Assembly: GCF_006345805.1 (NCBI RefSeq)
Contig: NC_042998.1
Location: 183,024,001 to 183,088,000, forward strand
Direction of reading: 5' to 3'
Length of the DNA: 64,000 nucleotides
Origin: Octopus sinensis
Lineage: Eukaryota
Below are positions 585 through 61,350 of this stretch, in pieces (positions within the stretch are counted from its first letter, which is position 1; each line of letters starts with the position of its first letter). The position numbers and the translations under genes are program-made. The notes below the pieces were generated by a model. That model saw nothing but the letters and a program-made list of their open reading frames with translations. It ran no database searches and had not been told where the DNA came from.

Positions 585-1517
585 GCTTTCCATGCTAGCA
601 TGGGTTAGACGATTTGACTGAGGTCTGGCGAACCAGATGGCTGCACCAGACTCCAATCTGATTTGGCAGAGTTTCTACAGCTGGATTCCCTTCCTAACGC
701 CAACCACTCCGAGAGTGTAGTGGGTGCTTTTACATGCCACCAACACAAGTGCTAGTCAGGCGGTACTGGCAACGGCCATGATCAAATGCTGCTTTTTATG
801 TGTCACCTGCACAGGAGCCAGTCCAGCGGCACTGGCAATGGCCTCACTCGAATGTTTTTTCACATGCCTCCAGTACAAGTGCTAATAAGGCAATGTAGGT
901 AACGATCACACTCGAATGGTGCTTTTTACATGCCACCGGCATGGAGGCCAGCTTGTTGCTCTGGCAACGATCACGCTCGTATGGTACTCTTAGCGCTCCA
1001 CTAGCACGGATGCCAGTCATTGAATTTGATTTTGATTTTGATTTCACTTGCCTCAATAGGTCTTCGCAAGCAGAGTTTAGTGTCCAATGAAGAAAAGGTA
1101 CGCATAAGTGGGCTTGTTGCACCTGTCATAGGCCATGAGGTTATGGTCTCACTTGGGCTTGCTGAGTTTTCTCAAGCACAGCATATTTCCAAAGGTCCCA
1201 GTCACTAGTCATTGCCTCGGTGGGGCCCAGTGTTCGAAGCTTCACCACCTCATCCCAGGTCTTCCTGGGTCTACCTCTTCCACACATTCCCTCAACCGCA
1301 AGGGTGTGGCACTTTTCTACACAGCTATCCACATCCATTCTCACCACATGGCCATACCAGCACAATCGTCTCTCTTGCACACCACATCTGATGCTTCTTA
1401 AGCTCAACTTTTCTCTCAAGGGACTAACACTTTGTCGAGTATGCACACTGACATTACACATCCATCGGAGCATACTGGCTTCATTCCTTACACATCCATT
1501 GGAGCACACTGGCTTCA
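585..1517 (-). mobile_element. 5'-truncated RTE-clade LINE (ORF C-terminus + repetitive 3' UTR)
   Basis: RRLCWYGHVVRMD...GRGRPRKTWDEVVK, followed by a 3' UTR with tandem ggtgcttttacrtgccacc units. Confidence 0.85.
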
Positions 1518-1624
1518 TTATTGTTATTGTTCAGGTCACTGCTTGGAGTTTGATTCAAGGCAGCGACCTGAATAATAATAATAATAATAATAATAACAAT
1601 AATAATAATAATAAACAACATCAA

Positions 1625-7958: not shown

Positions 7959-8069
7959 ACATATTGTAGTGTGTGGCCATATTACATATGACTCGGTCTC
8001 AAACTTCTTAAAAGATTTCTTACACAAAGACAGAGAAGACGTGGATGTAGAGATTATTTTTATTGATAC
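7959..8069 (+). CDS. slo: Slo1/BK channel exon, start of RCK1: [36 protein letters not shown](T)
   Basis: Polypyrimidine tract + ctacag acceptor and AC|gtaagt donor. Translation is nearly identical to the known Slo1 RCK1 start [25 protein letters not shown]. Phase 2-2, 111 nt. Confidence 0.97.
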
Positions 8070-11898: not shown

Positions 11899-12004
11899 GC
11901 AACTCCCTGATTTAGAACTTGAAGGGTTGCTTAAGAGGCATTTTACACAAGTAGAATTTTTCCAAGGCACGGTTATGGATGCCAATGATTTAGAAAGAGT
12001 AAAG
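11899..12004 (+). CDS. slo: Slo1 exon: [35 protein letters not shown]
   Basis: ttttccag acceptor and AAG|gtaagt donor. AC|G joins in frame with the previous exon. Matches the Slo1 [21 protein letters not shown] motif. Confidence 0.97.
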
Positions 12005-12578: not shown

Positions 12579-14637
12579 TCATCATCATCACCGTCACCCT
12601 TTAACATCCGTCTTCCATACTGGCATGGTTTGGATGGTTTGACCAGAGCTGACAAGCCGGAGAGCAGCAACAGGTTCCAATCTGATTTGGCTTGGTTTTT
12701 ATGACTGTATGCCCTTCCTAACACCAACCACTTTACAGTATGTGCTGGGTGATTTTAACATGACACCAGCACAGGCGCTTTTGCATGGCACTGGTGTGAA
12801 TGTTTTTTACATAGCACTGGCATAGGACCCTTATAAGTCAATCCTCTTCACCAGGGGATGCAGCTTTAACACTTCTGCTGTGGAGGACAGGTCTTCTCAA
12901 GTAGAGCAAGGCTCCAAGAATCTCAGTCTTTTGCCATTTCATTTGAAAGTTCAGCTGGGTCTCCTTCTTCCATGAGTTTCATTTACTTTGAGAGATCAGC
13001 ACTTTATGGAATTGTCAGCATCCATCCATATCATATGACCAAACAAGTGCATCTAATTCTTCTTATGCCTAACTTCTCACTCAATATACTCTGTCAAACA
13101 TGTACACTTACATTACACATCCAGCAGAGCATAAGAGCCTCATTCCTCTCTAGCCTTCACATCTACTCTGCATTCAAGGCCAACATCTCACTACCATGTA
13201 GAATGGCTATATAATCATCATCATCATCATCATCAACTTCATAATCTTTTAATGTCCATTTTCCATGCTGGTATTTGTTGGACAGTTTGACTGAAAACTG
13301 GTAAGCTAGGGAACTGCACCAGATTCCAGTCTGATTCGGCATGGTTTCTATGGCTGAAAGCCCTTCTTAATGCCAACCATTCCAAGAGGGTATATATGCC
13401 ATCTGCACAGGTGCCAGTTATGTAACACTACCATCAATCACGACTACAATTTCACTTGACTTGAGAGGCCTTCTGTAGCACAGTATATCGCCAAAGGTCT
13501 CAGTAACTTGTCACTGCCTCTGTGAGGTATAATGTTCAAACGGTGCTTTTTACATGCAACTGTCACCGGTGCCAGTTATGTGACACCAGCATCAGTCATG
13601 GCTTTGATTTCACTTGGCTTGATGAGTCTTCTCACACATTGCATATTGCCCAACGTTCGAAGGGTGCTTTTTATGTGTCAGTTACATGACTCTAGCATCA
13701 GCTACAACTAAGATTTCGCTTGCCTTGACATCATTCAATGTTTGAAGGGTGCCTTTTACATGCCAGTTATGCAATATTGGCATTGACCATGACTGTGATT
13801 TCACTTGGCTGGATAAGTCTTCTCAAGCACAGCATATCACCAGAGGTCTCAGTCACTTGTCATTGCCTCCGTGAGGCCCAACATTCAAAGATCATGCTTC
13901 ACCACCTCATCTCATGTCTTCCTGGGTCTACCTCTTCCACAGGTTCCCTCTACCATTAGAGTTTGGCACTTTTTTACACAGCTGTCCTCATCCATACGCA
14001 TCCACACAGACATCCAGTGAAGCCTACTAGCTTCATTTCTTTGAAGTTTATGCATGTCCTTGGTGGTCATAGCCCATGCTTCACTGCAGTGTAGCATGGC
14101 TATTTGCACAGGCATCATACAATCTGTCACTCTCAGAGAGAGGCCCTTTGTTACCAACAGAGGTAGGAGTTCTCTGAACTTTGCCCAGCCTATTCTTATT
14201 CTGGCAGCTGCACTCTTGAAGTATCTACCCCTGCTACTGACTTGGTCACCTAATAAATGGAAGCTATCAACTACTTCTAGTTTTCCCTCCTGGCAGTTAA
14301 TGGCAGTTCCCTCTTGTACATTTTTAGTGTTAATTGTATTTGCGCACCTTCCACACACAAAAGCTATTTTTCCTGTTAACCTTCTGATATTGCTGCCCCT
14401 CTTATGCATCCATAGCTTACATTGGGTACATTTTATGGAGTTTTTGTACCTATGCCTTTTCTACAGATTGAGTAAGGCCATCTATTTGAGGGGATTTGTG
14501 ATTTGTCTGCTCTCCTACTTACTAAGACTTTGGTTTCTGCTAGATTAAATCTAAGGTCTTTTGATCCTAGACTTTGCTTCCACATCTGAAATTTCTTCTC
14601 TAGTCCTGTTAATGATTCAGCTATAAAAATGACATAG
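12575..14637 (-). mobile_element. Two consecutive RTE fragments; the second runs from the 3' end into the RT domain with a Cys-rich insert
   Basis: (CAT)n tails at ~12577 and ~13217. Minus-strand CGRC..EVVDSFHLLGDQV..ARIRIGWAKFRELLPLL and IAESLTGLEKKFQMWKQSL..FNLAETKVLV. Confidence 0.85.
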
Positions 14638-14815: not shown

Positions 14816-16097
14816 CAATTGGAAATGTTGATAGCAGAAAACTGATGCAATGGAACAACATATATCAGGCTTGGAATTTTTCCTGAATAAATATTCACTA
14901 AGTTGGAGGAGTAGAATTGAAGTGAAGTTTCATACTCCACATGTATTGAGTTCTCTCTTTCCTTTCCCAGCTATTTTGATAATGAATCAACAAATAAAGA
15001 ACGATTGTCAGTGGGAAACTTTCACCAATCTTTAACAAATCTAAACTGTTAAATATTTGCTTACTGTTAAGCAGAGGTTTATAGACCATCACTGTAAATC
15101 ACAACCTGAAGCCCATCTATTAATTGCTTCTACACCATTATTTTTTGATAATCACAACACATCACATTAGTGATAATGAATATCATTGTATTTTCCTATT
15201 TAAAAAAATAAGGAAACAAATATTTGTTATTCTCAATTGATATAAATGGCTCAGTACAAGTTTTTAACCTTCATTAACTATTGGTTTTTGTCTTGGAAAA
15301 TAATTGAAATTTTTTTTTTAAATCAATATGAGTTATAGGTTCTTATAAATCTTTATTTTAATGATTCGAAATGGACATTTTTTTGTTAAAGAAAATCTCT
15401 GTCAAAATTTTTTATCTGCAGAGCAAAATAATGAATGGCGATAGTAATTTATTTGTCTACAATTTCTCTTCATCGAGACTTAGATGTCAACTCAGATTCA
15501 TTTATGCACATATTTATCCATGAGCTTACTGATTCACAGATGACGTTTTAGAGGAATACTAAAACAAGATGTATAAAATACTTTAACAGGGTTAAACCAT
15601 TTAGTTTTAACATTTGTTTCTTATGCTAGCATAGCTTAGACAGGAGGAAATCAAGGCAGGATATTTATGGCCACTTGCCTTTCCTGTCACAAACCTTCAA
15701 GTAAGGAATTTTTAATATTCCAGAGAAATTTGTAAGTGCACAACTAGTGAATGATTTGTTGATCAGAAATGTCAACAAACACCAAAAGAGTTACCAAACT
15801 TCTAGATGGGTCAGGGAACAACATCTTGCTTGTTCTGTTTTCATTTCTGCTTGGTTTCTATAGTTGGGTGCTTTTCCTATTATTAACTTTTACGGAGCAT
15901 ATAGGATGTATTTTATCATAGTACCAGCAATAGTGTACCCAGTCAGTTAAAAGAATCTTCATCATTCAATGTTGTTTCTGTTCATTCAGGACAATGTAAC
16001 TGATAGGGTGAGTAGAAGAGAGGGTGATTGCACAAGGTGAACTAAAATGGGTGGGAGAAAGGAGAGAAAATATGGGGAAAAAAGCGATCGGAGTGAT

Positions 16098-23349: not shown

Positions 23350-23502
23350 ATTCAGCAGGCAGATGCATGTTTGGTGCTAGCAAATAAATACTGTGATGAT
23401 CCTGACCAAGAAGATGCTGCAAACATCATGAGAGTAATCTCAATCAAGAATTATCATTCAGAGATTAAAGTTATTGTCCAGCTGTTGCAGTATCACAACA
23501 AG
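23350..23502 (+). CDS. slo: Slo1 exon: [51 protein letters not shown]
   Basis: tatttcag acceptor and AAG|gtaatc donor. 51 codons, phase 0-0, matching the Slo1 ADACLxLANKYC..[15 protein letters not shown]..QYHNK exon. Confidence 0.98.
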
Positions 23503-25394: not shown

Positions 25395-25550
25395 GCTTAC
25401 CTGTTAAACATTCCCAGCTGGGATTGGAAACGTGGCGATGATGCCGTGTGTATTGCTGAGTTAAAGCTTGGATTTATCGCTCAAAGTTGTTTGGCTCCTG
25501 GCTTCTCGACACTAATGGCTAATTTATTCACAATGAGGTCTTACAAGCCA
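25395..25550 (+). CDS. slo: Slo1 exon: [52 protein letters not shown]
   Basis: ttctacag acceptor and CCA|gtaagt donor. 52 codons, phase 0-0, with the hallmark Slo1 [15 protein letters not shown]. Confidence 0.98.
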
Positions 25551-28500
25551 GTAAGTAGTTCACCTAATGATCCCAGTTTCTTTTAATTATTCGTAAAATT
25601 ATTTTGTGTTTCGCCTCAGGGCTACTTTTTCTCTTTTACTTTACTCTGCAGTTTCTTACACACACAGAAGCATACACATAAATGTGTTGAAGGAAAGTGG
25701 TTCTGGACTGTTATTCTTAACAAGCCACTACCAAAGAAACAGATGATACAGTTGTGCCACTTGGAAATAAAGATTATAACAAGACAAAATAACAATGAAG
25801 TACTGTATCTCCAGGTTCTTCCACTGCATCGTTTGAGAGCAATGTTTAAAATAATAGACAAGCACAGGACTGAGATCTCCAAGCTAGAAAGAAAGGAAGG
25901 AATCAAACTGAAATTTGATATCTGATTCCATATACTTGAAGATGTTCTTTTCGCAAATCTATATCTTAGATTGTGTACACTCCATACTAAATTTAGTATG
26001 ACTAAATTAATGTGGAATCTTTCCTTTGCAGGACTGCATCATTCTGGAACCTAATACTCATAGTCATATGTTGCCAGTAATCTCTTCTAATGCAATGAAC
26101 TAACCCAGCTAACCTTATAATACTATCTAACACCCTACACATCTTCCCTCCTAGAGAAATAAACAAACTTTGTAACTAGAAAAAAAAAAAAGAAAGAATG
26201 AAACAATCGAAGAGAAGAAGGAAAGGTTATCAGGAAGCAATTTTTTTTTTTTTTTTTTATTAAATTACTAAAACTTTTCTATTTGTTATAAAAATAAACT
26301 TTATCATAAAAACCAAATTCCTGAAAAGCTTCTGTCAGAAGCTGTTTACCTTACTTAGATCCGAATGTGAAGAAATCAGGTGAAACTGAAGGTGTGTGGC
26401 ATAAATTTAGATTAAGAGATGGCTAAAAAACCTATCTGTAACAAACCTATTCTCCTAACTATTTCAGTTTTTGTTTATTATTTGTATTTGTAAGGAATGG
26501 GTGTACTTTGTTTGGTTTTGTTTTTTGTTGTTTTTTTGTGTGTTTTTGTTTGTTTTGTTTTGTTTGTTTTTTGCACTGGAAACTTGTAAGCTAGAATTGC
26601 AGAATATTTGATGAATAGTGATGGAAAAATCACTCAAACAGAAACTGTTCTGTGAAATGTAATAGTAAAAAGAATTAAGGAAAAGAAAAAAAAATGTTTA
26701 TGAGTGTGTTTTGTATGCATAATTAAGGAAAGCACAATAAAAAAAATAGCGTTGGTTAATAGACTTTTCAGTTGTGAATATAATCGTTCATATATTAATA
26801 GAATTCTTCTTCCAACCGAACAAGTTGTGCGCATGTGTAAGTGTATGCATGTGTGTCTGGAGAAAGAGAGAAAGAATATGTTACATAAGAAGCAATCATT
26901 GAAATAGATTTAAAAACATTATTCCTAAGCAATTATTATTTAAGGTAAAAAAAATAAAATATTTGGAAAGAAAATAATCTTTTGAAATGCTTAGAAAGCT
27001 GTCTATGAACTATATATTTACATCAACAAAATTTTTAGTGTAATTTTTAATCTCTTTCATAGATATTAAGCTTGAGTTTTCTCTTTTTTAAAAGAAAGGT
27101 GATTGGGTCTTTGAAACATTCCTGTCTTTACCAGAGCTGTAGATGAAATGAAGCATTTCCAGTTGAGAATTGAAACTGAATTTGTTGAAAACTTTCCCCA
27201 TAGGGTAATATTTGTCATTTAGATTTGTAAGGAACTGGAATAGGATTATGTGACAGTCATGCTTTTATCAAAAGCAAAATAAACAAAGGCTAAAATAGAC
27301 ATAAGCAAGCAATTCAGACTGGATCACAGATTAGGCTTATCAGGAACTTAACCTCTTGTCATACAGTACTTACCACATTATAATTGAATAGATGAACGGT
27401 TGACAAGTTTAGTTAATGATCATTTGGTTTGTTATGTGTCCAAACTCAGTAACAGCCTTTTTGTTATTGTATTTTTGTTGTTGCTTCAATACTTTATCAT
27501 CATTGTATGATTGCAATGAAGAAAAATCTAGTCTGCCTGTCTTGCACTAGAATTATGATGAAATTTCAAATTAGCTGGTGAAAAAATTAATTTTAAAAAT
27601 CTATTTTTAGCAATAAGATTCCATTGATTAGTTAAAGACTATTTACAATTATTTTTTTATTTTTACTATTACTACTACTACTATTATTATTATTATTATT
27701 AAGGCAACGAGCTGGCAGAATCGTTAACATACAGGGCAAAATTCCAAATTTCTATAAAATGCAACTAAAACAAAATAGGCACAGGTATAGCTGTATAGGT
27801 CCTGGCATAGCTGTGTGGTTAAGAAACTTGCTTTGCAACCACATGGTTTAGGGTTCAGTCCCATCATGCAGCTTCTAGCTGGTAAGCAGAAACTGGGTGG
27901 AGGCTTGTTGTGTGTTTGTGTGTGTGTGTGTGTGTCTTTGTGTTTATGTTTGTCCTCTGCCACCTCTTGACAACCAATTTTAGTTTGTTTATATCCCTGT
28001 TATATAGTGGTTCAGCAAAGGAAACCAATAGAATAAGTACCAGACTTATAATAGAGTACTAGAGTCAATTTGTTTGACTTAACCCTTCAAGGCAGTGCCC
28101 CAGTATGGTCACTGTTCAATGACTAAAACAAGTGAAAGGTAAAAAGATGATATCAGTTGTGAGTTCTTTTCTTTACTTGCTTATTCTGAAAGAATTGGAA
28201 TTTTGCGAAAATTCCAATTCCAGCCTTATTATGTTAGAATAGTAAGTAACATCTCATTTAAGTAGCTGTATGAACAGTCAGCTATGTGTACACTAAAATC
28301 TTATTCAGCAACACTAAACCATTATTAGCACTATTGTCTCACTGAAAACTTGGTCTTTGAATCTGTTTGTGTCACATGCTTGAAAACAATGTTGTTTGAT
28401 TCTTCCTCTAAGCCTTTCTTTAATCTGCAGGATAAAAATTAAAATTTATAGTTTACTTTTGTACATCAGAATATGTTGAAGCTGCATGGTCTAGTGGTTA

Positions 28501-28822
28501 GAATGTTGCATTTGTGATTGCAAGATCGTGGTTTCAATTCCAGGACTAGGTGGTGTATTGTGTTCTTGAGCAGAACACTTCATTTCGCATTGCTCCAGTT
28601 CACTCAGCTGTAAATGAATAACTCTATGACAGACTGGTGTCTTGTTCAGGGAATATTATGCTTTTGGTATCTTATATACCATGGCAAAACCAGGTAATCA
28701 ACCCTTTGAATCCTAGGACTCAAAACAGTACTTATTTACTTCACTTATAAGGAAATTAGAATGAAAGGTTTTAACTGTCTTAATTAATGTTCATTGAATA
28801 AAACATCTGAAAATTTATTATC

Positions 28823-29369: not shown

Positions 29370-29482
29370 TCTCCTGATATGGCACAATGGCAGAATGATT
29401 ACATGAGAGGTACTGCAATGGAAATGTACACAGAATATCTGTCCAGTTCATTTAGTGGGATGACATTTCCAGAAGCAGCAGA
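29370..29482 (+). CDS. slo: Slo1 exon: [37 protein letters not shown](E)
   Basis: (ct)n ctttttcag acceptor and GA|gtattt donor. EMYTE motif present. Phase 0-2. Confidence 0.96.
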
Positions 29483-40240: not shown

Positions 40241-40399
40241 GTTATGTTTCACGAAACTGAAACTCTTGTTGTTAGCTATTGAAGCACGTCTTGGTGATAG
40301 CAGAGAAAGTTCTCTAGCAATTAACCCAGGACCCAAAATCAAAATAGAAAGAGCAACTCAAGGATTCTTCATTGCAGAATCTGCTGAAGAAGTTAAAAG
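40241..40399 (+). CDS. slo: Slo1 exon: [52 protein letters not shown](R)
   Basis: ttttatag acceptor and AG|gtattt donor. LCFxKLKLLLxAIE ... INPG ... GFFIA motifs present. Phase 2-2. Confidence 0.97.
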
Positions 40400-42568: not shown

Positions 42569-42898
42569 GCGAGGGCGCGTGGCTTAGTGGTTAGGGCATT
42601 CGGCTCATGATCGTAAGGTTGTGAGTTCGATTCCCAGCGACGCGTTGTATCCCTGAGCAAGACACTTTATTTCACGTTGCTCCAGTCCACTCAGCTGGCA
42701 AAAATGAGTTGTACTTGTATTTCAAAGGGTCAGCCTTGTCACTCTCTGTGTCACGCTGATTTTCCCCGAGAACTACGTTAAGGGTACACGTGTCTGTGGA
42801 ATGCTCAGCCATTTGCACGTTAATTTCACGAGCAAGCTGTTCCGTTGATTGTATCAGCTGGGACCCTCGTCGTCGTAACCGGCGGAGTCTTTTTTTTT
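42569..42898 (+). mobile_element. Young tRNA-headed SINE with Meta-like core (family B) and poly-T tail
   Basis: A box TGGCTTAGTGG, B box GTTCGATTCC and ctgagcaagacactttatttcacgttgctccag core. 13-bp TSD tatggtagaaggc (42556-42568 / 42899-42911); CpG-rich. Confidence 0.85.
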
Positions 42899-43164: not shown

Positions 43165-43241
43165 GGCTTTCTATTATTGCAAGACTTGCCATGGAGTTGT
43201 GACAGATGTTCGAGCAATTAAAAAATGTCGATGTCGACCAG
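43165..43241 (+). CDS. slo: Slo1 exon with heme-binding CxxCH: [25 protein letters not shown]
   Basis: attatag acceptor and G|gtaggg donor. Homologous to [24 protein letters not shown]. Phase 2-1, 77 nt. Confidence 0.95.
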
Positions 43242-43861
43242 GTAGGGATGTTGTTTTAATTTGCATGTGTCATTATTAATTTCAACATTGTACTAGAAAT
43301 GAAGAGACAAGTTTGTAAGCTGAAAGGAATTTGAAGTATCGTTAATTGTTGTGAATCATAAAGTACATGGTGAAGAATATACAAATGTACAATATTTTAT
43401 TTTGATTTCTTTGTTTTGAGGTTTGGTATATAAATATATATAAGACATACTTCAGTATAATATATTTTTCATATTCTTTGTCATTAATGTGTTTATCTAC
43501 TGTAGACCTCCCACAAGGAGAATATTTTTAAAACACTCAAGTCTCAACTATAAAAATGTTTCAGTTAATCATTATTTAAAATCCACTTCCATTTTTGTAA
43601 TTAATATAAAACGCAATAGTGGTATGTCATCAACCATACTGCATTAGACCTTGATCAAAATAAACTCTCAATGTTTTGATTTAGAGAAAGAGAGGAAATT
43701 ATTAAGTAGTGATATTCCTATTCCCATTCACATGTTATGCAGTTAAATAACCAGACTTCTTGAAAGATATTTCATTTACCATAAAATATGTTTAACAGTC
43801 ACACTTAGGACTACATCTCCAGTTATAACACCATATAATTTCTGAGTATTGTAATTGAATA

Positions 43862-44145
43862 GGCCCATGGCTCGATGGTTAGAGCATCAGGCTCACAATC
43901 ATGAGGCTGTGAGTTCAAATCCTGGACCGGGGTGTGTGTTGTGTTCTTGAGCAAGACACTTTATTTCATGGTGCTCCAGTTTACTCAGCTGTAGAAATGA
44001 GTTGCAACATCATTGGTGCCAAACTGTATTGACCTTTGCCTTGGATAACATTGGTGACATGGAGAGGGGAGTCTGGTATGCATGGATGATTGCTGGTCTT
44101 TCATAAACAAACAACCTTGCCCAAACTTGTGCCTCAGAGGGGAAC
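43862..44145 (+). mobile_element. tRNA-headed SINE family B (alternative 3' tail)
   Basis: Collinear with 50655-50985. Confidence 0.8.
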
Positions 44146-47142
44146 TTTGTATGTGTAATCCTATAGTCATTCATAATCAAAGGGGTCTTTACCCATTTTT
44201 ATTACAACTGAAGTGCACACATTTAAAAATAATTAATGCTTTATTTAAACACATTGTCTCCATTAAAGAATGTTACAATGTCACTTGTTAAACTTTAAAA
44301 AGAATAAACTCCTGTACATTTGGTGGATTCAATACTTTATAGAATCCAAATAGTAGAACAATGTAACTGTTTAAGAATCAATGCAACCAAATTTTTTTCT
44401 GATATAATACAAAGCAATTGTAAAATAATTTCCATCTTTTTGGCCATTTTATTCACTATTTAAATACCCTTGTCTTGACACATGTGACTAAGTTCTTAAA
44501 TATTGTTGTTAATCTGAATCTATAAGCTGTCATCATCTCTTTCACCCCAATTTATTGTTCTTGACCAGTACAATCTGGATTGCAATGGAATACATTATTT
44601 TTTATTTATTTTTGACCCTATTTAAAAAGAAGTCTTGAAAATGTATTAGTAGTGAGAATTATTTGTTTTGTTTTGTTTTTAACTTTTTATGATATCTATC
44701 AATATTCTTTCATTTCTTTTGTAATATCATCTCTGCAGCAACACCATCCAATACTGTATGGCACTATTTTCACTTTAGGTTATAAGAACTGTCTGAGCAA
44801 GTTATGCCACTTCTTCTCAAACTTCATACATTTCAAACAGTACCGTTTTCTTCAATGTTTTCATAAATTTCTCTCATATAATACCACTTCTTTAAGTAAA
44901 CATTAAATTTTCACTAAATATCTCATTCATTTTCACTGAAGCAAAACATACTTTTCTTTTTTTTTTTTTCTTTTGTTACCAAAATTCAGTATTTCCAAAC
45001 CTTTCATGTGAAATTATCTGCATACAATATGATAATGATAAGAAATGCCTCCACTCAATTTTTTCAGTAGAAAATCATGTAAATTTTACAGTATAAACTC
45101 AGACATGTTTTAATAAAATACATAATAAGTTAAGTAAATATTTTAAGTTTATAAAAACACTTTCATATGCTGAACAACTAGAATAAAGAATTTTTTGTGT
45201 TATGCTTATTGATTCCATGTGTTTTATCTAATATTAAGAAAAATCTCTTTCCTTTCTTTCTCAAATATTAACAATTTTTATTTGTTGCTAATATGAAAAA
45301 TTCTACCATCAAAAACAGCAGCTATTTTAGTTCATCTTCTCACCTAATGCTAACTTATTCTATGGTGTAATAATGGCAGCAGAATACAAAAAGCTTACAA
45401 ATAGAAAGAATTATTCTTAGTGAAAAATATATTGTACTAACAATGAGACTGAAATCTTTCAACTGCATTATCTAGAAATGAATTGTATAAGCCATATCAA
45501 TGAAAAACCCTAAATATTGAGAGAAAGCAAGAAGCATTTAAATGTTTATCTTCATTAATCATATGACAGATAAGAAGCTCGTGTTATCAAATTAAAACAA
45601 AAATTAGAGATAATTCAACATGAAATTGTCTATATATTTGGAACTAGTTTGCTATTTATTATAGATAGTCTAGTTGAATAAACAGATAACTAGTCTTCTG
45701 CCAATGAGTAAACCTTTTACATGGTTGCTTATTCTGCTAGAAATAGTAACCAAATTGCCAAACATCATTTTCTAGCCTGAAAAAAAAGAAGAGCATATTG
45801 GACAATGTTGGATAATGTAGACTTAGATAGACTGGTTACTACTGGAACATATTTGGCCATAGGTTTGTTTTAGTCTGTGATCACCTAGAGCTAGACAACA
45901 ACAAAAAATGACCAGTCATTAATAAGTATATACAGGGACAGAAAATATTTCAGTTCTAGCCTGCTGCTGAATTTATATCAAGCACAAATATCCACTACCC
46001 TGGAATATGACTCAAATATATGAATGATGCTCTTTACCATATACACACATATCAGCCAATGAACAGACTCTCTATGTGATCACTCAACATGCTTGAAATG
46101 GCAGTTAGATATTATTCAAATCACACCCTGATGACCTACAGAATATAAAGACAATAATGTCATCTTAGATGCCTTGAAACAGTTGGATTGGTCATGGCTT
46201 GCGTGCCTTTGGTCATGGCTTGAGTGCCTTTGATCACAGGTCTGCTTAATTGGGGTGACATGGAACTAAACAATAATATACACATTCTAGATTGCATACT
46301 TCTCTACAAGAAAGCTATTTTATAGATAAGACTTCACTCATGAGTGCTCTACAACATCTAACTCCATTATCATTCTTCTGCCATTGCAATGCAAAAGTTT
46401 CTACTCTGCATATGCAGTACCCTTAGCTTGACCATCAGAACAGAATGACTAGTCCTTTGACTTCATCTAACTATCTCCAACCATCATCACAGAAGAGCAT
46501 TGTTGATACTCAGACTAAGAATTAGAAACATACAAATATATGTCTGCGCATGTGTGTGTGTGTGTATACACACCCTCACACCTATAGATAAATATCTATG
46601 TACATATATATTCATATATAGATACATATAAATAGCACAGTATTCACTTGATAGTAATTATAGAAGACAAAGTAAATTAATCATAATGTGTATATCATTG
46701 TGACATTGACTAGCTATGTCATAAAATTTAACAACCAGAATAACAGGCAAATCAATAATACACCATAAACTTCTATGTATAACCCTTCATCATATTTTAT
46801 TGCTGCTAGCTATTCATTGCAAATCTATCTCTTCTCAGATTCTTCTCATACTGTTTCCATTATAACATAATAAAAAAAAATATTCTTTTACTTACAGCAT
46901 GCTTTTTTTATTTTTAACATTTCATTTATTCAAATGGTGTTTTAAATATTTCATAGATCCATCAAATTTTCATTAATTCATATTTATATATATATATATA
47001 TTTATATTTTCCTATTAATATAGTATAACTTAATTTCCTGATTCTATTAACCAACTGAAGTCCCAGACTTGAACAATTATGGAGTATTGATTAAGATAAC
47101 CATACTTATTATTGTTTTCAAATTTCTTTTTCCCTCTCACAG

Positions 47143-47178
47143 TTGCATTATTCCGAAAAGGAGCATCCGCAGTTCTAG
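47143..47178 (+). CDS. slo: Slo1 36-nt linker exon: (V)ALFRKGASAVL(x)
   Basis: Strong tract tttctttttccctctcacag and CTAG|gtagag donor. Symmetric phase 1-1. The peptide resembles the insect Slo segment LATFRKGVRAVQ that follows KKCKCK (recalled homology). Confidence 0.8.
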   Translation: MHYSEKEHPQF

Positions 47179-50390: not shown

Positions 50391-50654
50391 TTGGAAGAAA
50401 TCATTTTAATTATTACTATTAGAGCAGTGAGTTAGCTGAAGCATTTGTGTCAGAAACAGTGCAACACAATATTTCTTCCTACTCTTATGTTCCGAGTTCA
50501 ATCTCTTCTGAAGTCAGTTTTACCTTTCCTCCTTTTGGGTTTGATAAAATAAAGTATCAGCCAAGTTCTGGGTTTGGTGGTATCAGCCAAATCCCTACTT
50601 CTGAAATTGCTGGCCTTATGCCAAAATTTGAAACCATTAATTATTATTATTGTG

Positions 50655-50985
50655 AAGGCGCATGGCTCAGTGGTTAGAGCGTCGAACTTACAACCGTCAG
50701 GTTGTGAGTTCGAATCCCAGACCGAGCTGCATGTTGTGTTCTTGAGCAAGACACTTTATTTCACGTTGCTCCAGTTTACTCAGCTGTAGAAATGAGTTGC
50801 GATGTCAATGGTGCCAAGCTGTATCAGCCTTTGCCTTTCTCTTGGATAACATCGGTGGCATGGAGAGGGGAGGCTGGTATGCATGGGCAACTGTTGGCCT
50901 TCCATAAACAACCTTGCCCGGACTTGCGCCGGGAGGGTAACTTTCTAGGTGCAATCCCACGGTCATTCATGACCGAAGGGGTCTC
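50655..50985 (+). mobile_element. tRNA-headed SINE family B (alternative 3' tail)
   Basis: A/B boxes and the same core as 42569, with a different tail shared with 43862-44140. A further partial copy is at 28485-28640. Confidence 0.8.
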
Positions 50986-51602
50986 CACAATTATTATTAT
51001 TGTTGTTTTTATTATTATTATTATCATTATTATTAAGGCAGAAGCTGGCAGAATTGTTAGTGCATAGAACAAAATATTTAGCCGTAATTTGTCTGTCTTA
51101 CATCCTGAGTTCAAACTCTGCCAAAGTTTCAGGGTTGATTAAATGAGTATCAGCTGAGCACTGAAATCAATGTTATCAGCTAGTTCCTCCACCAAAATCT
51201 CAGGCCTTGTCACTATAATACAAAGGATTTTATTATTACATTTTCCAGTTTTTTTGTTTTTTTTTGTAACTATTTAATATATTGTTACTTTTTCCCTACA
51301 CATAAGGTAAGTAATGTTTCATTTATAATTAACCTTTGATTTTGTTTATTGATCATTGCATTAATTTATTCTTTGCTAAAATTAAATATATGCAAAATAG
51401 GTCCCTATACATGCTTTTTTGATTTTTTTTTTTTCAGTACATATTTTAAATATCAACGTTTATTTCTACAGGCTGTTACTACTTTAGCTATGAAAAATAT
51501 TCTTTTTCACTGTTTATTATTCATACAGTTGTTTTTGTTCCCCTTTCTTTCTTTCTGTCTCTCAAAATTTTTGAGATAATCCATCTTTATTTCTTTTTAC
51601 AG

Positions 51603-51608
51603 CATCGG
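51603..51608 (+). CDS. slo: Candidate 6-nt Slo1 microexon CATCGG (adds two residues, Ala-Ser with the upstream G)
   Basis: ctttatttctttttacag|CATCGG|gtaaga. Strong acceptor and donor 6 nt apart, frame-preserving in phase 1. No transcript evidence available. Confidence 0.55.
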
Positions 51609-52429
51609 GTAAGAAAATACAGCACTTTGTAACTATTATGGTTAGATGGCAGTAATATGCCACACACATCTTGTGCTTTATTTAATGCATTTAAATCACT
51701 GTGGTTATTGTTGTTGTGGTTTCAACCATTGTATCTTTTGATTTTTAATAGTTAGTGAAAATATGCCAGTAGTTGAATGGTATAATAGCCCTTTGTTTGC
51801 ATGAATTGGATTTACCCTTTAGTTTTGTGTATGTGTGTGTGTGTGTGTGTATGCGGATATATATGTTTATATATTTGAGTTTTTTTCTCAGTTTATGTTT
51901 TATGGCTTTTGTAAGTTGAATAAATGATATCATCACAGTTTATATTAGATATAACAAACCTATGCCAGACACTGTACACACACTAACCCAAAGGTATATT
52001 CAGCACTTTTATGCTTTGTTCCACAAAATATAGAAGATAGATACTCACCGTATTTAGTCTTGTGTATGCTGTACCCTATACTTTGCATGGAAAAGCTGAT
52101 GCAAATTTTTTATAATCTTAATTCTGCATGGAAGATGAGACTATAAGGGCTAGGGAGCTTTCCAAAATTGTATTACATGTGTACTGTTCTTAGTAGAATT
52201 AAACAATTAAATTTTGAACACATTGATTTAGGAATAACCACATCATGCATAATACATAACCAAAAATTATATTATGATATCAAAGAAAACCATTAAAGCA
52301 AATTTAATAAGTCATCAATTAATGTTCAAGGTTAAGCTCAATTATGAAATTATCAATCAATAACAAAATATTATTAATTACAACTTAAAGAAATCAATGT
52401 TAAAATCAATTTAGAAGTCAGTTAAATGT

Positions 52430-61305: not shown

Positions 61306-61350
61306 CATTACAAAGAAGGTCTGAATTGACACACACAGACAACCAAATAG
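61306..61350 (+). CDS. slo: Candidate 45-nt Slo1 linker exon: (A)LQRRSELTHTDNQI(x)
   Basis: Branch-like actaaac, tract cttccttgttactttttcccttcag and ATAG|gtattc donor. Open in phase 1-1, 15 codons. Confidence 0.65.

What the first reader, a model, noticed from the sequence alone, without database searches (positions are those of the whole stretch)
51585..51620. Candidate 6-nt microexon in the BK channel RCK1-RCK2 linker
ctttatttctttttacag|CATCGG|gtaaga has strong splice signals only 6 nt apart and is in the correct phase, converting ..VL-A-LQ.. to ..VL-A-S-A-LQ.. and adding a Ser. It is embedded in ~350 nt of non-repetitive U-rich sequence with several further acceptor-like tracts. TGCATG (Rbfox) motifs lie downstream at 51798, 52084 and 52125. 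With the 36- and 45-nt exons it would give up to 8 in-frame linker combinations. Gene predictors and standard aligners usually miss such exons. Neural microexon programs are established in bilaterians; use here is inferred.
Basis: partly seen in the sequence, partly recalled or inferred. Interest (0 to 1): 0.75.

Follow-up and report, generated by a model that had tools for sequence, protein, structure and literature searches.

The report
Six-base exon in octopus BK channel
The six bases CATCGG at 51603-51608 are very probably a real, alternatively used mini-exon of the octopus BK potassium-channel gene: it adds alanine-serine to a flexible linker, cuttlefish use one too, and public octopus gene models already contain the insert, so the guess is confirmed but the exon is not new.

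Summary
The sequence is as described: ...tctttatttctttttacag|CATCGG|gtaaga, exon 51603-51608, on the sense strand of an octopus BK (Slo1/KCNMA1) gene. It lies in the 14-kb intron between the 36-nt (47143-47178) and 45-nt (61306-61350) linker exons.

- **Chance:** a splice-site pair this strong and 3-30 nt apart is expected 0.1-0.23 times per strand of the window. At exactly 6 nt it is expected about 0.005 times.
- **Octopus gene models:** two Octopus sinensis RefSeq isoforms carry exactly the predicted Ala-Ser insert. X7 reads CRCRP-AS-VLSS and X4 reads AVL-AS-VLSS.
- **Cuttlefish RNA:** a Sepia esculenta RNA-seq contig has a 6-nt insert, CCTCAG, at the same junction. Same-species contigs that keep the flanking introns show it touches neither neighbouring exon, so it is a separate microexon.
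- **Conservation:** octopus and cuttlefish versions differ only at two synonymous positions.
- **Specificity:** only 1.8% of AG-N6-GT sites in the window could encode Ala-Ser.

Every observed AS isoform skips the 45-nt exon. There is no Rbfox enrichment, no SRRM4-type cis code, and no tissue data.

I could not map an octopus transcript onto these coordinates directly. Confidence that it is a real microexon is about 0.9. It is a new member of a known kind.

The parts
43165..43241 (+). Linker-proximal coding exon (R)[25 protein letters not shown], ending with one base (G) of a split codon. In isoform X7 its donor joins directly to the AS insert.
   Evidence: tblastn; sequence; exon map and translation; 100% match to Octopus BK proteins
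47143..47178 (+). 36-nt cassette exon VALFRKGASAVL, phase 1-1. Homologous to LAMFKKGAAAVL in other molluscs and LATFRKGVRAIQL in insects.
   Evidence: present or absent among octopus isoforms
51575..51581 (+). Putative branch-point sequence GAUAAUC, with the branch A about 23 nt upstream of the AG. Inferred from consensus only.
   Evidence: sequence; inference from the yUnAy/URAY consensus; not tested
51584..51602 (+). Polypyrimidine tract and acceptor tctttatttctttttacAG. No AG lies between 51576 and 51600.
   Evidence: PWM 10.3 bits, among the 40 best acceptors on the strand
51603..51608 (+). 6-nt cassette microexon CATCGG. Read as G|CA TCG G|NN it inserts Ala-Ser and restores the following split codon.
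   Evidence: the AS insert in O. sinensis X4 and X7; a separate 6-nt Ala-Ser exon, CCTCAG, at the same junction in Sepia esculenta
51609..51614 (+). Donor site CGG|GTAAGA, 7 of 9 matches to CAG|GTAAGT.
   Evidence: PWM 10.0 bits, among the 13 best donors on the strand
51798..51803 (+). Nearest downstream TGCATG, 190 nt past the donor. A possible Rbfox site, not distinguishable from chance.
   Evidence: 0.64 TGCATG per kb on this strand
61306..61350 (+). 45-nt cassette exon (A)LQRRSELTHTDNQI, phase 1-1. Never seen together with the AS insert.

Best explanation
Window 51603-51608 (CATCGG) is a genuine, alternatively included 6-nt cassette exon of the octopus BK (Slo1/KCNMA1-type) channel gene. 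The window's coding sequence matches O. sinensis and O. vulgaris proteins.

How it works. Every linker exon here is phase 1-1, ending in G. Splicing in CATCGG therefore reads G|CA TCG G|NN. That inserts Ala-Ser and rebuilds the next codon unchanged. The result is a two-residue lengthening of the disordered RCK1-RCK2 linker with one new serine.

Observed products. Exon 43165-43241 + AS + next linker exon (O. sinensis X7). The 36-nt exon + AS + next linker exon (O. sinensis X4 and cuttlefish RNA). Forms without AS also exist.

Recognition. Recognition of so small an exon presumably rests on its unusually strong acceptor and donor. This is inferred.

What is shown:
- the signals, the phase and their rarity;
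- the AS isoforms;
- that the cuttlefish insert is a stand-alone exon;
- that the two species differ only at synonymous positions.

What is inferred:
- that the octopus AS comes from this exact locus;
- that the insert is functional. One possibility is that it adds a phosphorylatable serine: in the 36-skipped context the sequence becomes R-C-R-P-A-S-V, which fits the R-x-R-x-x-S consensus of basophilic AGC kinases.
For: (1) Signals and statistics. The pair is the best microexon-like pair in the intron. The expectation is about 0.005 for 6-nt spacing and 0.1-0.23 for 3-30 nt.

(2) Octopus isoforms. P0361 (XP_036356400.1, X7) equals the X1 backbone with the 36+45 region replaced by CRCRP-AS-VLSS. 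My constructed '36 + AS' isoform turned out to exist as XP_029654892.1, X4.

(3) Specificity. Only 4 of 220 AG-N6-GT sites on the strand encode Ala-Ser in this phase. The candidate is the only one between exon 43165-43241 and the window end that yields A-S-V.

(4) Cuttlefish.
- L002 reads ...GTATTAG|CCTCAG|TTCTCTC.
- L004 is 100% identical to L002 over 2075 nt. It shows the intron after the 36-nt exon starting gtatag.
- L003 is 100% identical over 1274 nt. It shows the intron before the next exon ending ...attctttcag.
- The 6-mer is therefore a separate exon.

(5) Conservation. CATCGG and CCTCAG differ only at the third positions of the Ala and Ser codons.

(6) Context. The same intron holds cassette exons in other molluscs, for example the oyster 18-nt GFGNKL.
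Against: - No octopus transcript or exon table could be aligned to the window. The gene spans 331 kb and no DNA was returned.
- The exon following the insert lies beyond the window. An alternative acceptor there, or another 6-nt exon in the unseen part of the intron, is not formally excluded in octopus.
- The O. bimaculoides (X2-X7), Argonauta hians and S. pharaonis isoforms I read lack the insert.
- A more distant mollusc (L001) has no comparable site in the homologous 2.2-kb intron.
- No functional or tissue data exist.
- The kinase-motif reading is pattern matching only.
Confidence: 0.9

Rival explanations
1. The site is a chance decoy. The Ala-Ser of octopus isoforms X4 and X7 then comes from elsewhere: an alternative acceptor 6 nt upstream of the next linker exon (ag|CNTCAG|TT would also read A-S-V), or another 6-nt exon in the part of the intron beyond the window.
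For: - Six-base acceptor shifts are easier for annotation pipelines to detect than 6-nt internal exons (general knowledge).
- The next exon and its acceptor are outside the window, so this cannot be inspected in octopus.
- Both observed octopus AS forms place AS directly before that exon.
Against: - In cuttlefish the equivalent explanation is excluded at nucleotide level by same-species contigs. The acceptor region is ...attctttcag, not ...agCCTCAG. The donor region after the 36-nt exon is gtatag.
- A decoy would have to combine three things by coincidence: top-ranked splice signals at 6-nt spacing (expected about 0.005 per strand), the correct phase, and the Ala-Ser coding seen in 1.8% of AG-N6-GT sites.
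Confidence: 0.06
2. The exon is real and belongs to the bilaterian neural microexon programme. On this reading it is included in neurons through the SRRM3/4 (eMIC) factor with help from Rbfox bound at downstream UGCAUG.
For: - It is the right size, frame-preserving, in an excitability gene, and has a long U-rich acceptor tract.
- One TGCATG lies 190 nt downstream and two more within 520 nt.
- A CU-rich tract sits about 40-60 nt upstream.
Against: - No TGC occurs in the 40 nt before the acceptor, and none is visible in the about 77 nt before it in the sequence.
- The nearest upstream AG is only 27 nt away, so the AG-exclusion zone is short.
- Both features are hallmarks of eMIC-dependent exons in flies and mammals (PMC8797185), and both are unmet.
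- TGCATG density is ordinary: about 0.19 are expected in 300 nt, and 2.6% of 530-nt windows hold three or more.
- The only RNA source identified is whole juvenile cuttlefish (PMC9538352), which says nothing about tissue.
Confidence: 0.3
3. The exon is spliced in, but as tolerated low-level noise in a disordered linker with no selected function.
For: - The linker is highly variable in length and sequence across phyla.
- The insert is two small residues.
- It is absent from the isoforms I read for three cephalopod species.
Against: - The Ala-Ser coding is retained between octopus and cuttlefish, with changes only at synonymous positions.
- The splice signals are near-consensus.
- It was abundant enough to be assembled from one RNA-seq run and to enter two RefSeq models.
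Confidence: 0.12

Closest known systems
Vertebrate KCNMA1 splice site 2 (STREX site): the 3-residue IYF mini-exon in the RCK1-RCK2 linker
   Same: Same gene family and same protein region, downstream of the CKxCH...KKCxC motif and upstream of DSTGMFHW. Both are tiny frame-preserving cassettes that combine with larger neighbouring cassettes (PMC3840924).
   Different: The sequence is different (IYF versus AS), and there is no evidence of exon homology. [quoted passage not shown]
Vertebrate KCNMA1 splice site 1: the 4-residue SRKR exon
   Same: A very small alternative exon in the BK cytosolic domain. Its effect runs through phosphorylation of a nearby serine, which is a precedent for a tiny exon acting as a phospho-switch (PMC3840924).
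   Different: It lies near the end of RCK1, not in the linker, and it adds basic residues rather than the serine itself.
Cassette exons after the FKKG exon in other molluscs, e.g. oyster GFGNKL (18 nt) and the Elysia 17-residue insert
   Same: They occupy the same intron, immediately after the LAxFKKGxxAV(L/I) exon, in RefSeq isoform sets (P0306 versus P0298; P0276 versus P0254).
   Different: The lengths and sequences differ. The one non-cephalopod mollusc intron I could read (L001) has no 6-nt counterpart. The AS exon therefore looks cephalopod-specific as far as I could test.
SRRM3/4 (eMIC)-dependent neural microexons of bilaterians
   Same: Size class (3-27 nt), frame preservation, and location in a neuronal excitability gene.
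   Different: The defining cis code (UGC next to the acceptor, long AG-exclusion zone) is absent here. Tissue specificity is unknown.

Membership tests
Alternatively spliced cassette microexon (3-27 nt) | An internal segment of 3-27 nt flanked by AG and GT, with usable splice signals | tested here: met
   The segment is 6 nt. The acceptor scores 10.3 bits and the donor 10.0 bits, both in the top tier of the strand.
Alternatively spliced cassette microexon (3-27 nt) | Preserves the reading frame without a stop | tested here: met
   The introns are phase 1-1. G|CA TCG G| reads Ala-Ser.
Alternatively spliced cassette microexon (3-27 nt) | Present in some mature mRNAs and absent from others | tested here: met
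   O. sinensis X4 and X7 carry AS, while X9, X13, X1 and others lack it. In Sepia esculenta, L002 has the insert and P0380 and P0243 do not.
Alternatively spliced cassette microexon (3-27 nt) | A separate exon, not an alternative donor or acceptor of a neighbouring exon | tested here: met
   Shown in cuttlefish: L004 (donor side) and L003 (acceptor side) are not contiguous with CCTCAG. In octopus the donors of exons 43165-43241 and 47143-47178 are followed by gtaggg and gtagag, which excludes donor shifts. The acceptor side could not be read.
Alternatively spliced cassette microexon (3-27 nt) | Transcript-to-genome alignment places the insert at these coordinates | not testable with these tools
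   No DNA was returned for the 331-kb O. sinensis gene, and no octopus RNA contig was retrievable. The placement rests on the coincidence argument.
BK channel RCK1-RCK2 linker splice hot spot | Lies between the CKxCH...KKC(R/K)C(R/K) motif that ends RCK1 and the DSTGMFHW motif that starts RCK2 | tested here: met
   The exon map and the protein alignments show this position.
eMIC (SRRM3/4)-dependent neural microexon | UGC motif close to the 3' splice site | tested here: not met
   No TGC occurs from -40 to -3, and none is visible in the roughly 77 nt upstream.
eMIC (SRRM3/4)-dependent neural microexon | Long AG-exclusion zone and UCUC-rich polypyrimidine tract | tested here: not met
   The nearest upstream AG is at 51574-51575, 27 nt away. 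The proximal tract is U-rich, and the CU repeats lie upstream of that AG. Criteria are from PMC8797185.
eMIC (SRRM3/4)-dependent neural microexon | Neuron-specific inclusion that depends on the factor | not testable with these tools
   No tissue-resolved RNA data were available.
Rbfox-enhanced exon | (U)GCAUG within about 300 nt downstream, enriched or conserved | tested here: inconclusive
   One site lies at +190, where about 0.19 are expected by chance. Conservation could not be tested.
Recursive splice site / RS-exon | A 5' splice site is regenerated at the junction (AG|GTAAGT) | tested here: not met
   The acceptor is followed by CATCGG, so no GT is recreated after joining to ...CAG or ...TAG.

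The most novel reading that the evidence does not exclude
The AS exon is a cephalopod-wide, eMIC-independent regulatory microexon, retained since octopuses and cuttlefish diverged. On this reading it is spliced mutually exclusively with the neighbouring 45-nt exon. In the 36-skipped context it creates an R-x-R-x-x-S phospho-acceptor (RCRPAS-V), making BK gating switchable by a basophilic kinase. That would be an invertebrate parallel to STREX/SRKR-type phospho-regulation.
Probability: 0.15. Interest if true: 0.55.

Novelty: new member of a known kind. Interest (0 to 1): 0.4.

Why it matters
Three points make this worth recording.
- A reader working from raw sequence alone picked out a real 6-nt exon. 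That is a useful calibration for such scans.
- BK channel diversity in cephalopods is generated in the same linker hot spot as in vertebrates, insects and nematodes. Here it includes a two-residue cassette kept between octopus and cuttlefish.
- The practical value is in annotation. The insert is modelled in O. sinensis (X4, X7). It is missing from the isoforms I read for O. bimaculoides, Argonauta hians and Sepia pharaonis.

If the serine turns out to be a regulated phospho-site, it would be a compact handle on BK regulation in cephalopod neurons. Otherwise this is an ordinary alternative microexon.

Tried and rejected
- **First two protein searches.** They showed no cephalopod proteins. The longest listed hits were about 1.75 times the query length in both searches, which suggested a length limit. 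Repeating the 318-aa in-window CDS three times brought up the full-length Octopus, Argonauta and Sepia proteins.
- **Exact look-ups of window ORFs.** Nothing was on record.
- **Metagenome scan for the spliced junction with 0-12 nt inserted.** No match.
- **Representative-library search with the 30-aa next-exon peptide.** No hits, so no genomic ORF covering the octopus acceptor was found.
- **Genomic DNA for the O. sinensis, Argonauta and S. pharaonis genes.** The genes span 246-331 kb, and no DNA was returned.
- **Distant mollusc locus L001.** The exons are conserved but the introns cannot be aligned, and there is no 6-nt candidate.
- **Alternative donor or acceptor origin of the insert.** Rejected for cuttlefish. 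Rejected for the octopus donors.
- **Recursive splicing.** Rejected, because no regenerated GT forms.
- **A longer exon sharing the acceptor or donor.** Rejected. The frame is open for only 11 codons upstream, and there is no usable in-frame donor downstream before the stop at 51653.
- **Local RNA structure.** Not significant, z = -1.0.
- **Constructed isoforms with AS before or after the 45-nt exon (X2 backbone), and an O. vulgaris AS form.** None is in the collection. This is uninformative about real usage.
- **Literature.** No paper was found describing this exon or cephalopod BK splicing.

Full report
**What is in the window.** The + strand carries part of a BK (Slo1/KCNMA1-type) channel gene. 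A tblastn probe located RCK1 through the start of the RCK1-RCK2 linker. I set the exon borders by eye; all have AG/GT:
- 7959-8069
- 11899-12004
- 23350-23502
- 25395-25550
- 29370-29482
- 40241-40399
- 43165-43241
- 47143-47178 (36 nt)
- 61306-61350 (45 nt)

Together these give 318 residues. That peptide is 100% identical to Octopus BK proteins. The 45-nt exon reads SELTHTDNQI, as in O. sinensis, whereas O. bimaculoides has SELVHTDNQI. The window therefore matches O. sinensis, or possibly O. vulgaris, whose 45-nt exon I did not see.

**The observation.** One search shows tctttatttctttttacag|CATCGG|gtaaga, with the 6-mer at 51603-51608. The three linker exons are all phase 1-1, so the 6-mer reads G|CA TCG G|, which is Ala-Ser.

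A generic PWM gives 10.3 bits for the acceptor and 10.0 bits for the donor. The + strand has 40 acceptors and 13 donors at least as good. Pairs 3-30 nt apart are expected 0.11-0.23 times per strand, or 0.115 in Markov-3 simulations. At exactly 6 nt the expectation is 0.005. Two pairs are seen on the sense strand and none on the antisense strand.

The candidate is the best microexon-like pair in the 14-kb intron. The region 51240-51760 is unique within the window and 51% T upstream of the exon. The 840 nt before that region are repeat-derived.

**Transcript-level evidence in octopus.** The protein search tool appeared to list only hits up to about 1.75 times the query length. Tripling the query exposed the full-length cephalopod proteins, and their cluster members were then listed.
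- O. sinensis isoform X7 (XP_036356400.1) reads ...KKCRCRP-AS-VLSSVTN..., while X9 reads ...CRCRPVLSSVTN....
- X7 equals the X1 backbone with only that change.
- I predicted a second form, the 36-nt exon followed by AS. The constructed 1177-residue sequence exists as XP_029654892.1, isoform X4.

The insert is exactly what CATCGG encodes when spliced between a G-ending exon and the TT-starting next exon.

**Could AS come from elsewhere?** The exon after the insert (VLSSVTNMPNKK...) lies beyond the window. No genomic DNA could be obtained for the 246-331-kb cephalopod genes. An acceptor shift of 6 nt (ag|CNTCAG|TT) would also read A-S-V, so I tested this in cuttlefish.
- L002, a Logan RNA contig from SRR20545808 (Sepia esculenta juveniles, PMC9538352), reads ...GCAGTATTAG|CCTCAG|TTCTCTCTTCTG....
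- L004 is 100% identical to L002 over 2075 nt. It runs through the donor of the 36-nt exon into gtatagtacc.
- L003 is 100% identical to L002 over the first 1274 nt of the downstream exons. It retains the upstream intron, which ends ...taatctattctttcag.

CCTCAG is contiguous with neither neighbour, so in cuttlefish the insert is a stand-alone 6-nt exon.

In octopus, donor shifts are excluded because the two donors are followed by gtaggg and gtagag.

The coincidence needed for the window site to be a decoy is severe. Only 4 of 220 AG-N6-GT sites on the strand encode Ala-Ser in this phase. Only the candidate, between exon 43165-43241 and the window end, gives A-S-V. That comes on top of the 0.005 expectation for the splice signals. 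I put the decoy reading at about 6%.

**Conservation.** Octopus CATCGG and cuttlefish CCTCAG differ at two positions. Both are third codon positions (GCA/GCC for Ala, TCG/TCA for Ser). From my own knowledge, these lineages split roughly 250-300 million years ago, so retention of the dipeptide suggests purifying selection.

The insert is not in the isoforms I read for O. bimaculoides (X2-X7), Argonauta hians (one) or S. pharaonis (three). That says only that those models lack it.

A more distant mollusc contig (L001) has the 36-nt and 45/51-nt exon homologues 2.2 kb apart, with no comparable 6-nt site. Its introns do not align to the window.

Other molluscs place different cassettes in the same intron, for example oyster GFGNKL (18 nt) and a 17-residue Elysia insert. 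In nematodes and insects the FRKG exon is followed directly by a few extra residues in the same protein. This junction is a long-standing site of length variation.

The specific VL-A-S-A-LQ product was not found. All three documented AS forms skip the 45-nt exon. Constructs with AS before or after the 45-nt exon (36-nt exon skipped, X2 backbone) are not in the collection. Isoform numbering appears to follow decreasing length, which leaves no room for such forms on the X1 backbone either.

Five of the eight combinations are documented: none, 36, 36+45, AS, and 36+AS. Whether AS and the 45-nt exon are mutually exclusive or simply under-sampled is open.

**Regulation.**
- TGCATG occurs 41 times on the strand, and three within 530 nt is seen in 2.6% of windows.
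- No TGC lies in the 40 nt before the acceptor, and none is visible in the about 77 nt before it.
- The AG-exclusion zone is only about 26 nt.
- The eMIC/SRRM4 code described for flies and mammals (PMC8797185) is therefore not met.
- Local RNA structure is unremarkable.
- Tissue specificity could not be tested.

**Mechanism.**
- Shown: a phase-neutral 6-nt cassette that adds Ala-Ser to the linker.
- Inferred: its strong splice sites compensate for the tiny exon size.
- Speculative: in the 36-skipped context the insert creates R-C-R-P-A-S-V. This fits the R-x-R-x-x-S motif of basophilic AGC kinases (motif recalled from my own knowledge, not tested). It would parallel the phosphorylation-linked effects of the vertebrate SRKR and STREX exons (PMC3840924).

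**Comparison and verdict.** The closest known relative is the vertebrate site-2 IYF mini-exon in the same linker. The class is the ordinary alternative microexon. The insert is already present in two O. sinensis RefSeq models, and I found no paper describing it.
- The regulatory inferences are not supported.
- Novelty is modest.

Noticed in passing
window 15990-16007 (+): A second strong acceptor/donor pair, 18 nt apart: tgttgtttctgttcattcag|GACAATGTAACTGATAGG|gtgagt, scoring 10.9 and 10.9 bits. It lies in the phase-0 intron between exons 11899-12004 and 23350-23502. Only the required frame is open (DNVTDR). Inclusion would give ERVK-DNVTDR-IQQADAC inside RCK1. None of the cephalopod isoforms I read, and none of 62 homologues, has an insert there.
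   Followed up: partly
window 61306-61350: The 45-nt exon encodes ...SELTHTDNQI here and in O. sinensis, but ...SELVHTDNQI in O. bimaculoides and ...SELAGTDNRI in Sepia pharaonis. The exon is conserved but evolves fast. Thr to Val needs two base changes, so it is a genomic difference and not A-to-I editing.
   Followed up: partly
proteins P0306 vs P0298, P0276 vs P0254, P0287, P0257: Other molluscs have their own cassette exons in the intron right after the FKKG exon: oyster GFGNKL (18 nt), an Elysia 17-residue insert, and longer Mytilus and Argopecten inserts. This intron is a recurrent birthplace of small linker exons.
   Followed up: partly
window 51290-51314 (+): The sequence ttactttttccctacacataag|gtaagtaatg juxtaposes an acceptor-like tract with a perfect AAG|GTAAGT donor about 295 nt upstream of the microexon. 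It resembles a recursive-splice or decoy site, although the A at -3 of the acceptor is unfavourable. I did not score or pursue it.
   Followed up: no
window 50400-51240; also 43847-44204, 42571-42711, 28477-28617: A dispersed repeat family at about 70-80% identity ends about 360 nt upstream of the microexon. Retroelement ORF fragments (GRGRPRKTWDEVV-type) lie at 1141-1518(-) and 13912-14409(-).
   Followed up: partly
L004 2400-2420 (Sepia esculenta intron after the 36-nt exon): A TGCATG lies about 70 nt into the cuttlefish intron downstream of the 36-nt exon (ttctgtttgcatgatt). The octopus 36-nt exon has none within 600 nt. I did not evaluate this further.
   Followed up: no
P0380 vs P0383 (cuttlefish RNA contigs): One cuttlefish contig reads YHNKAHLLNIPSW where all the others read [14 protein letters not shown] Tyr/His difference is not an A-to-G change. 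It may be a polymorphism, an assembly error or an alternative exon.
   Followed up: no
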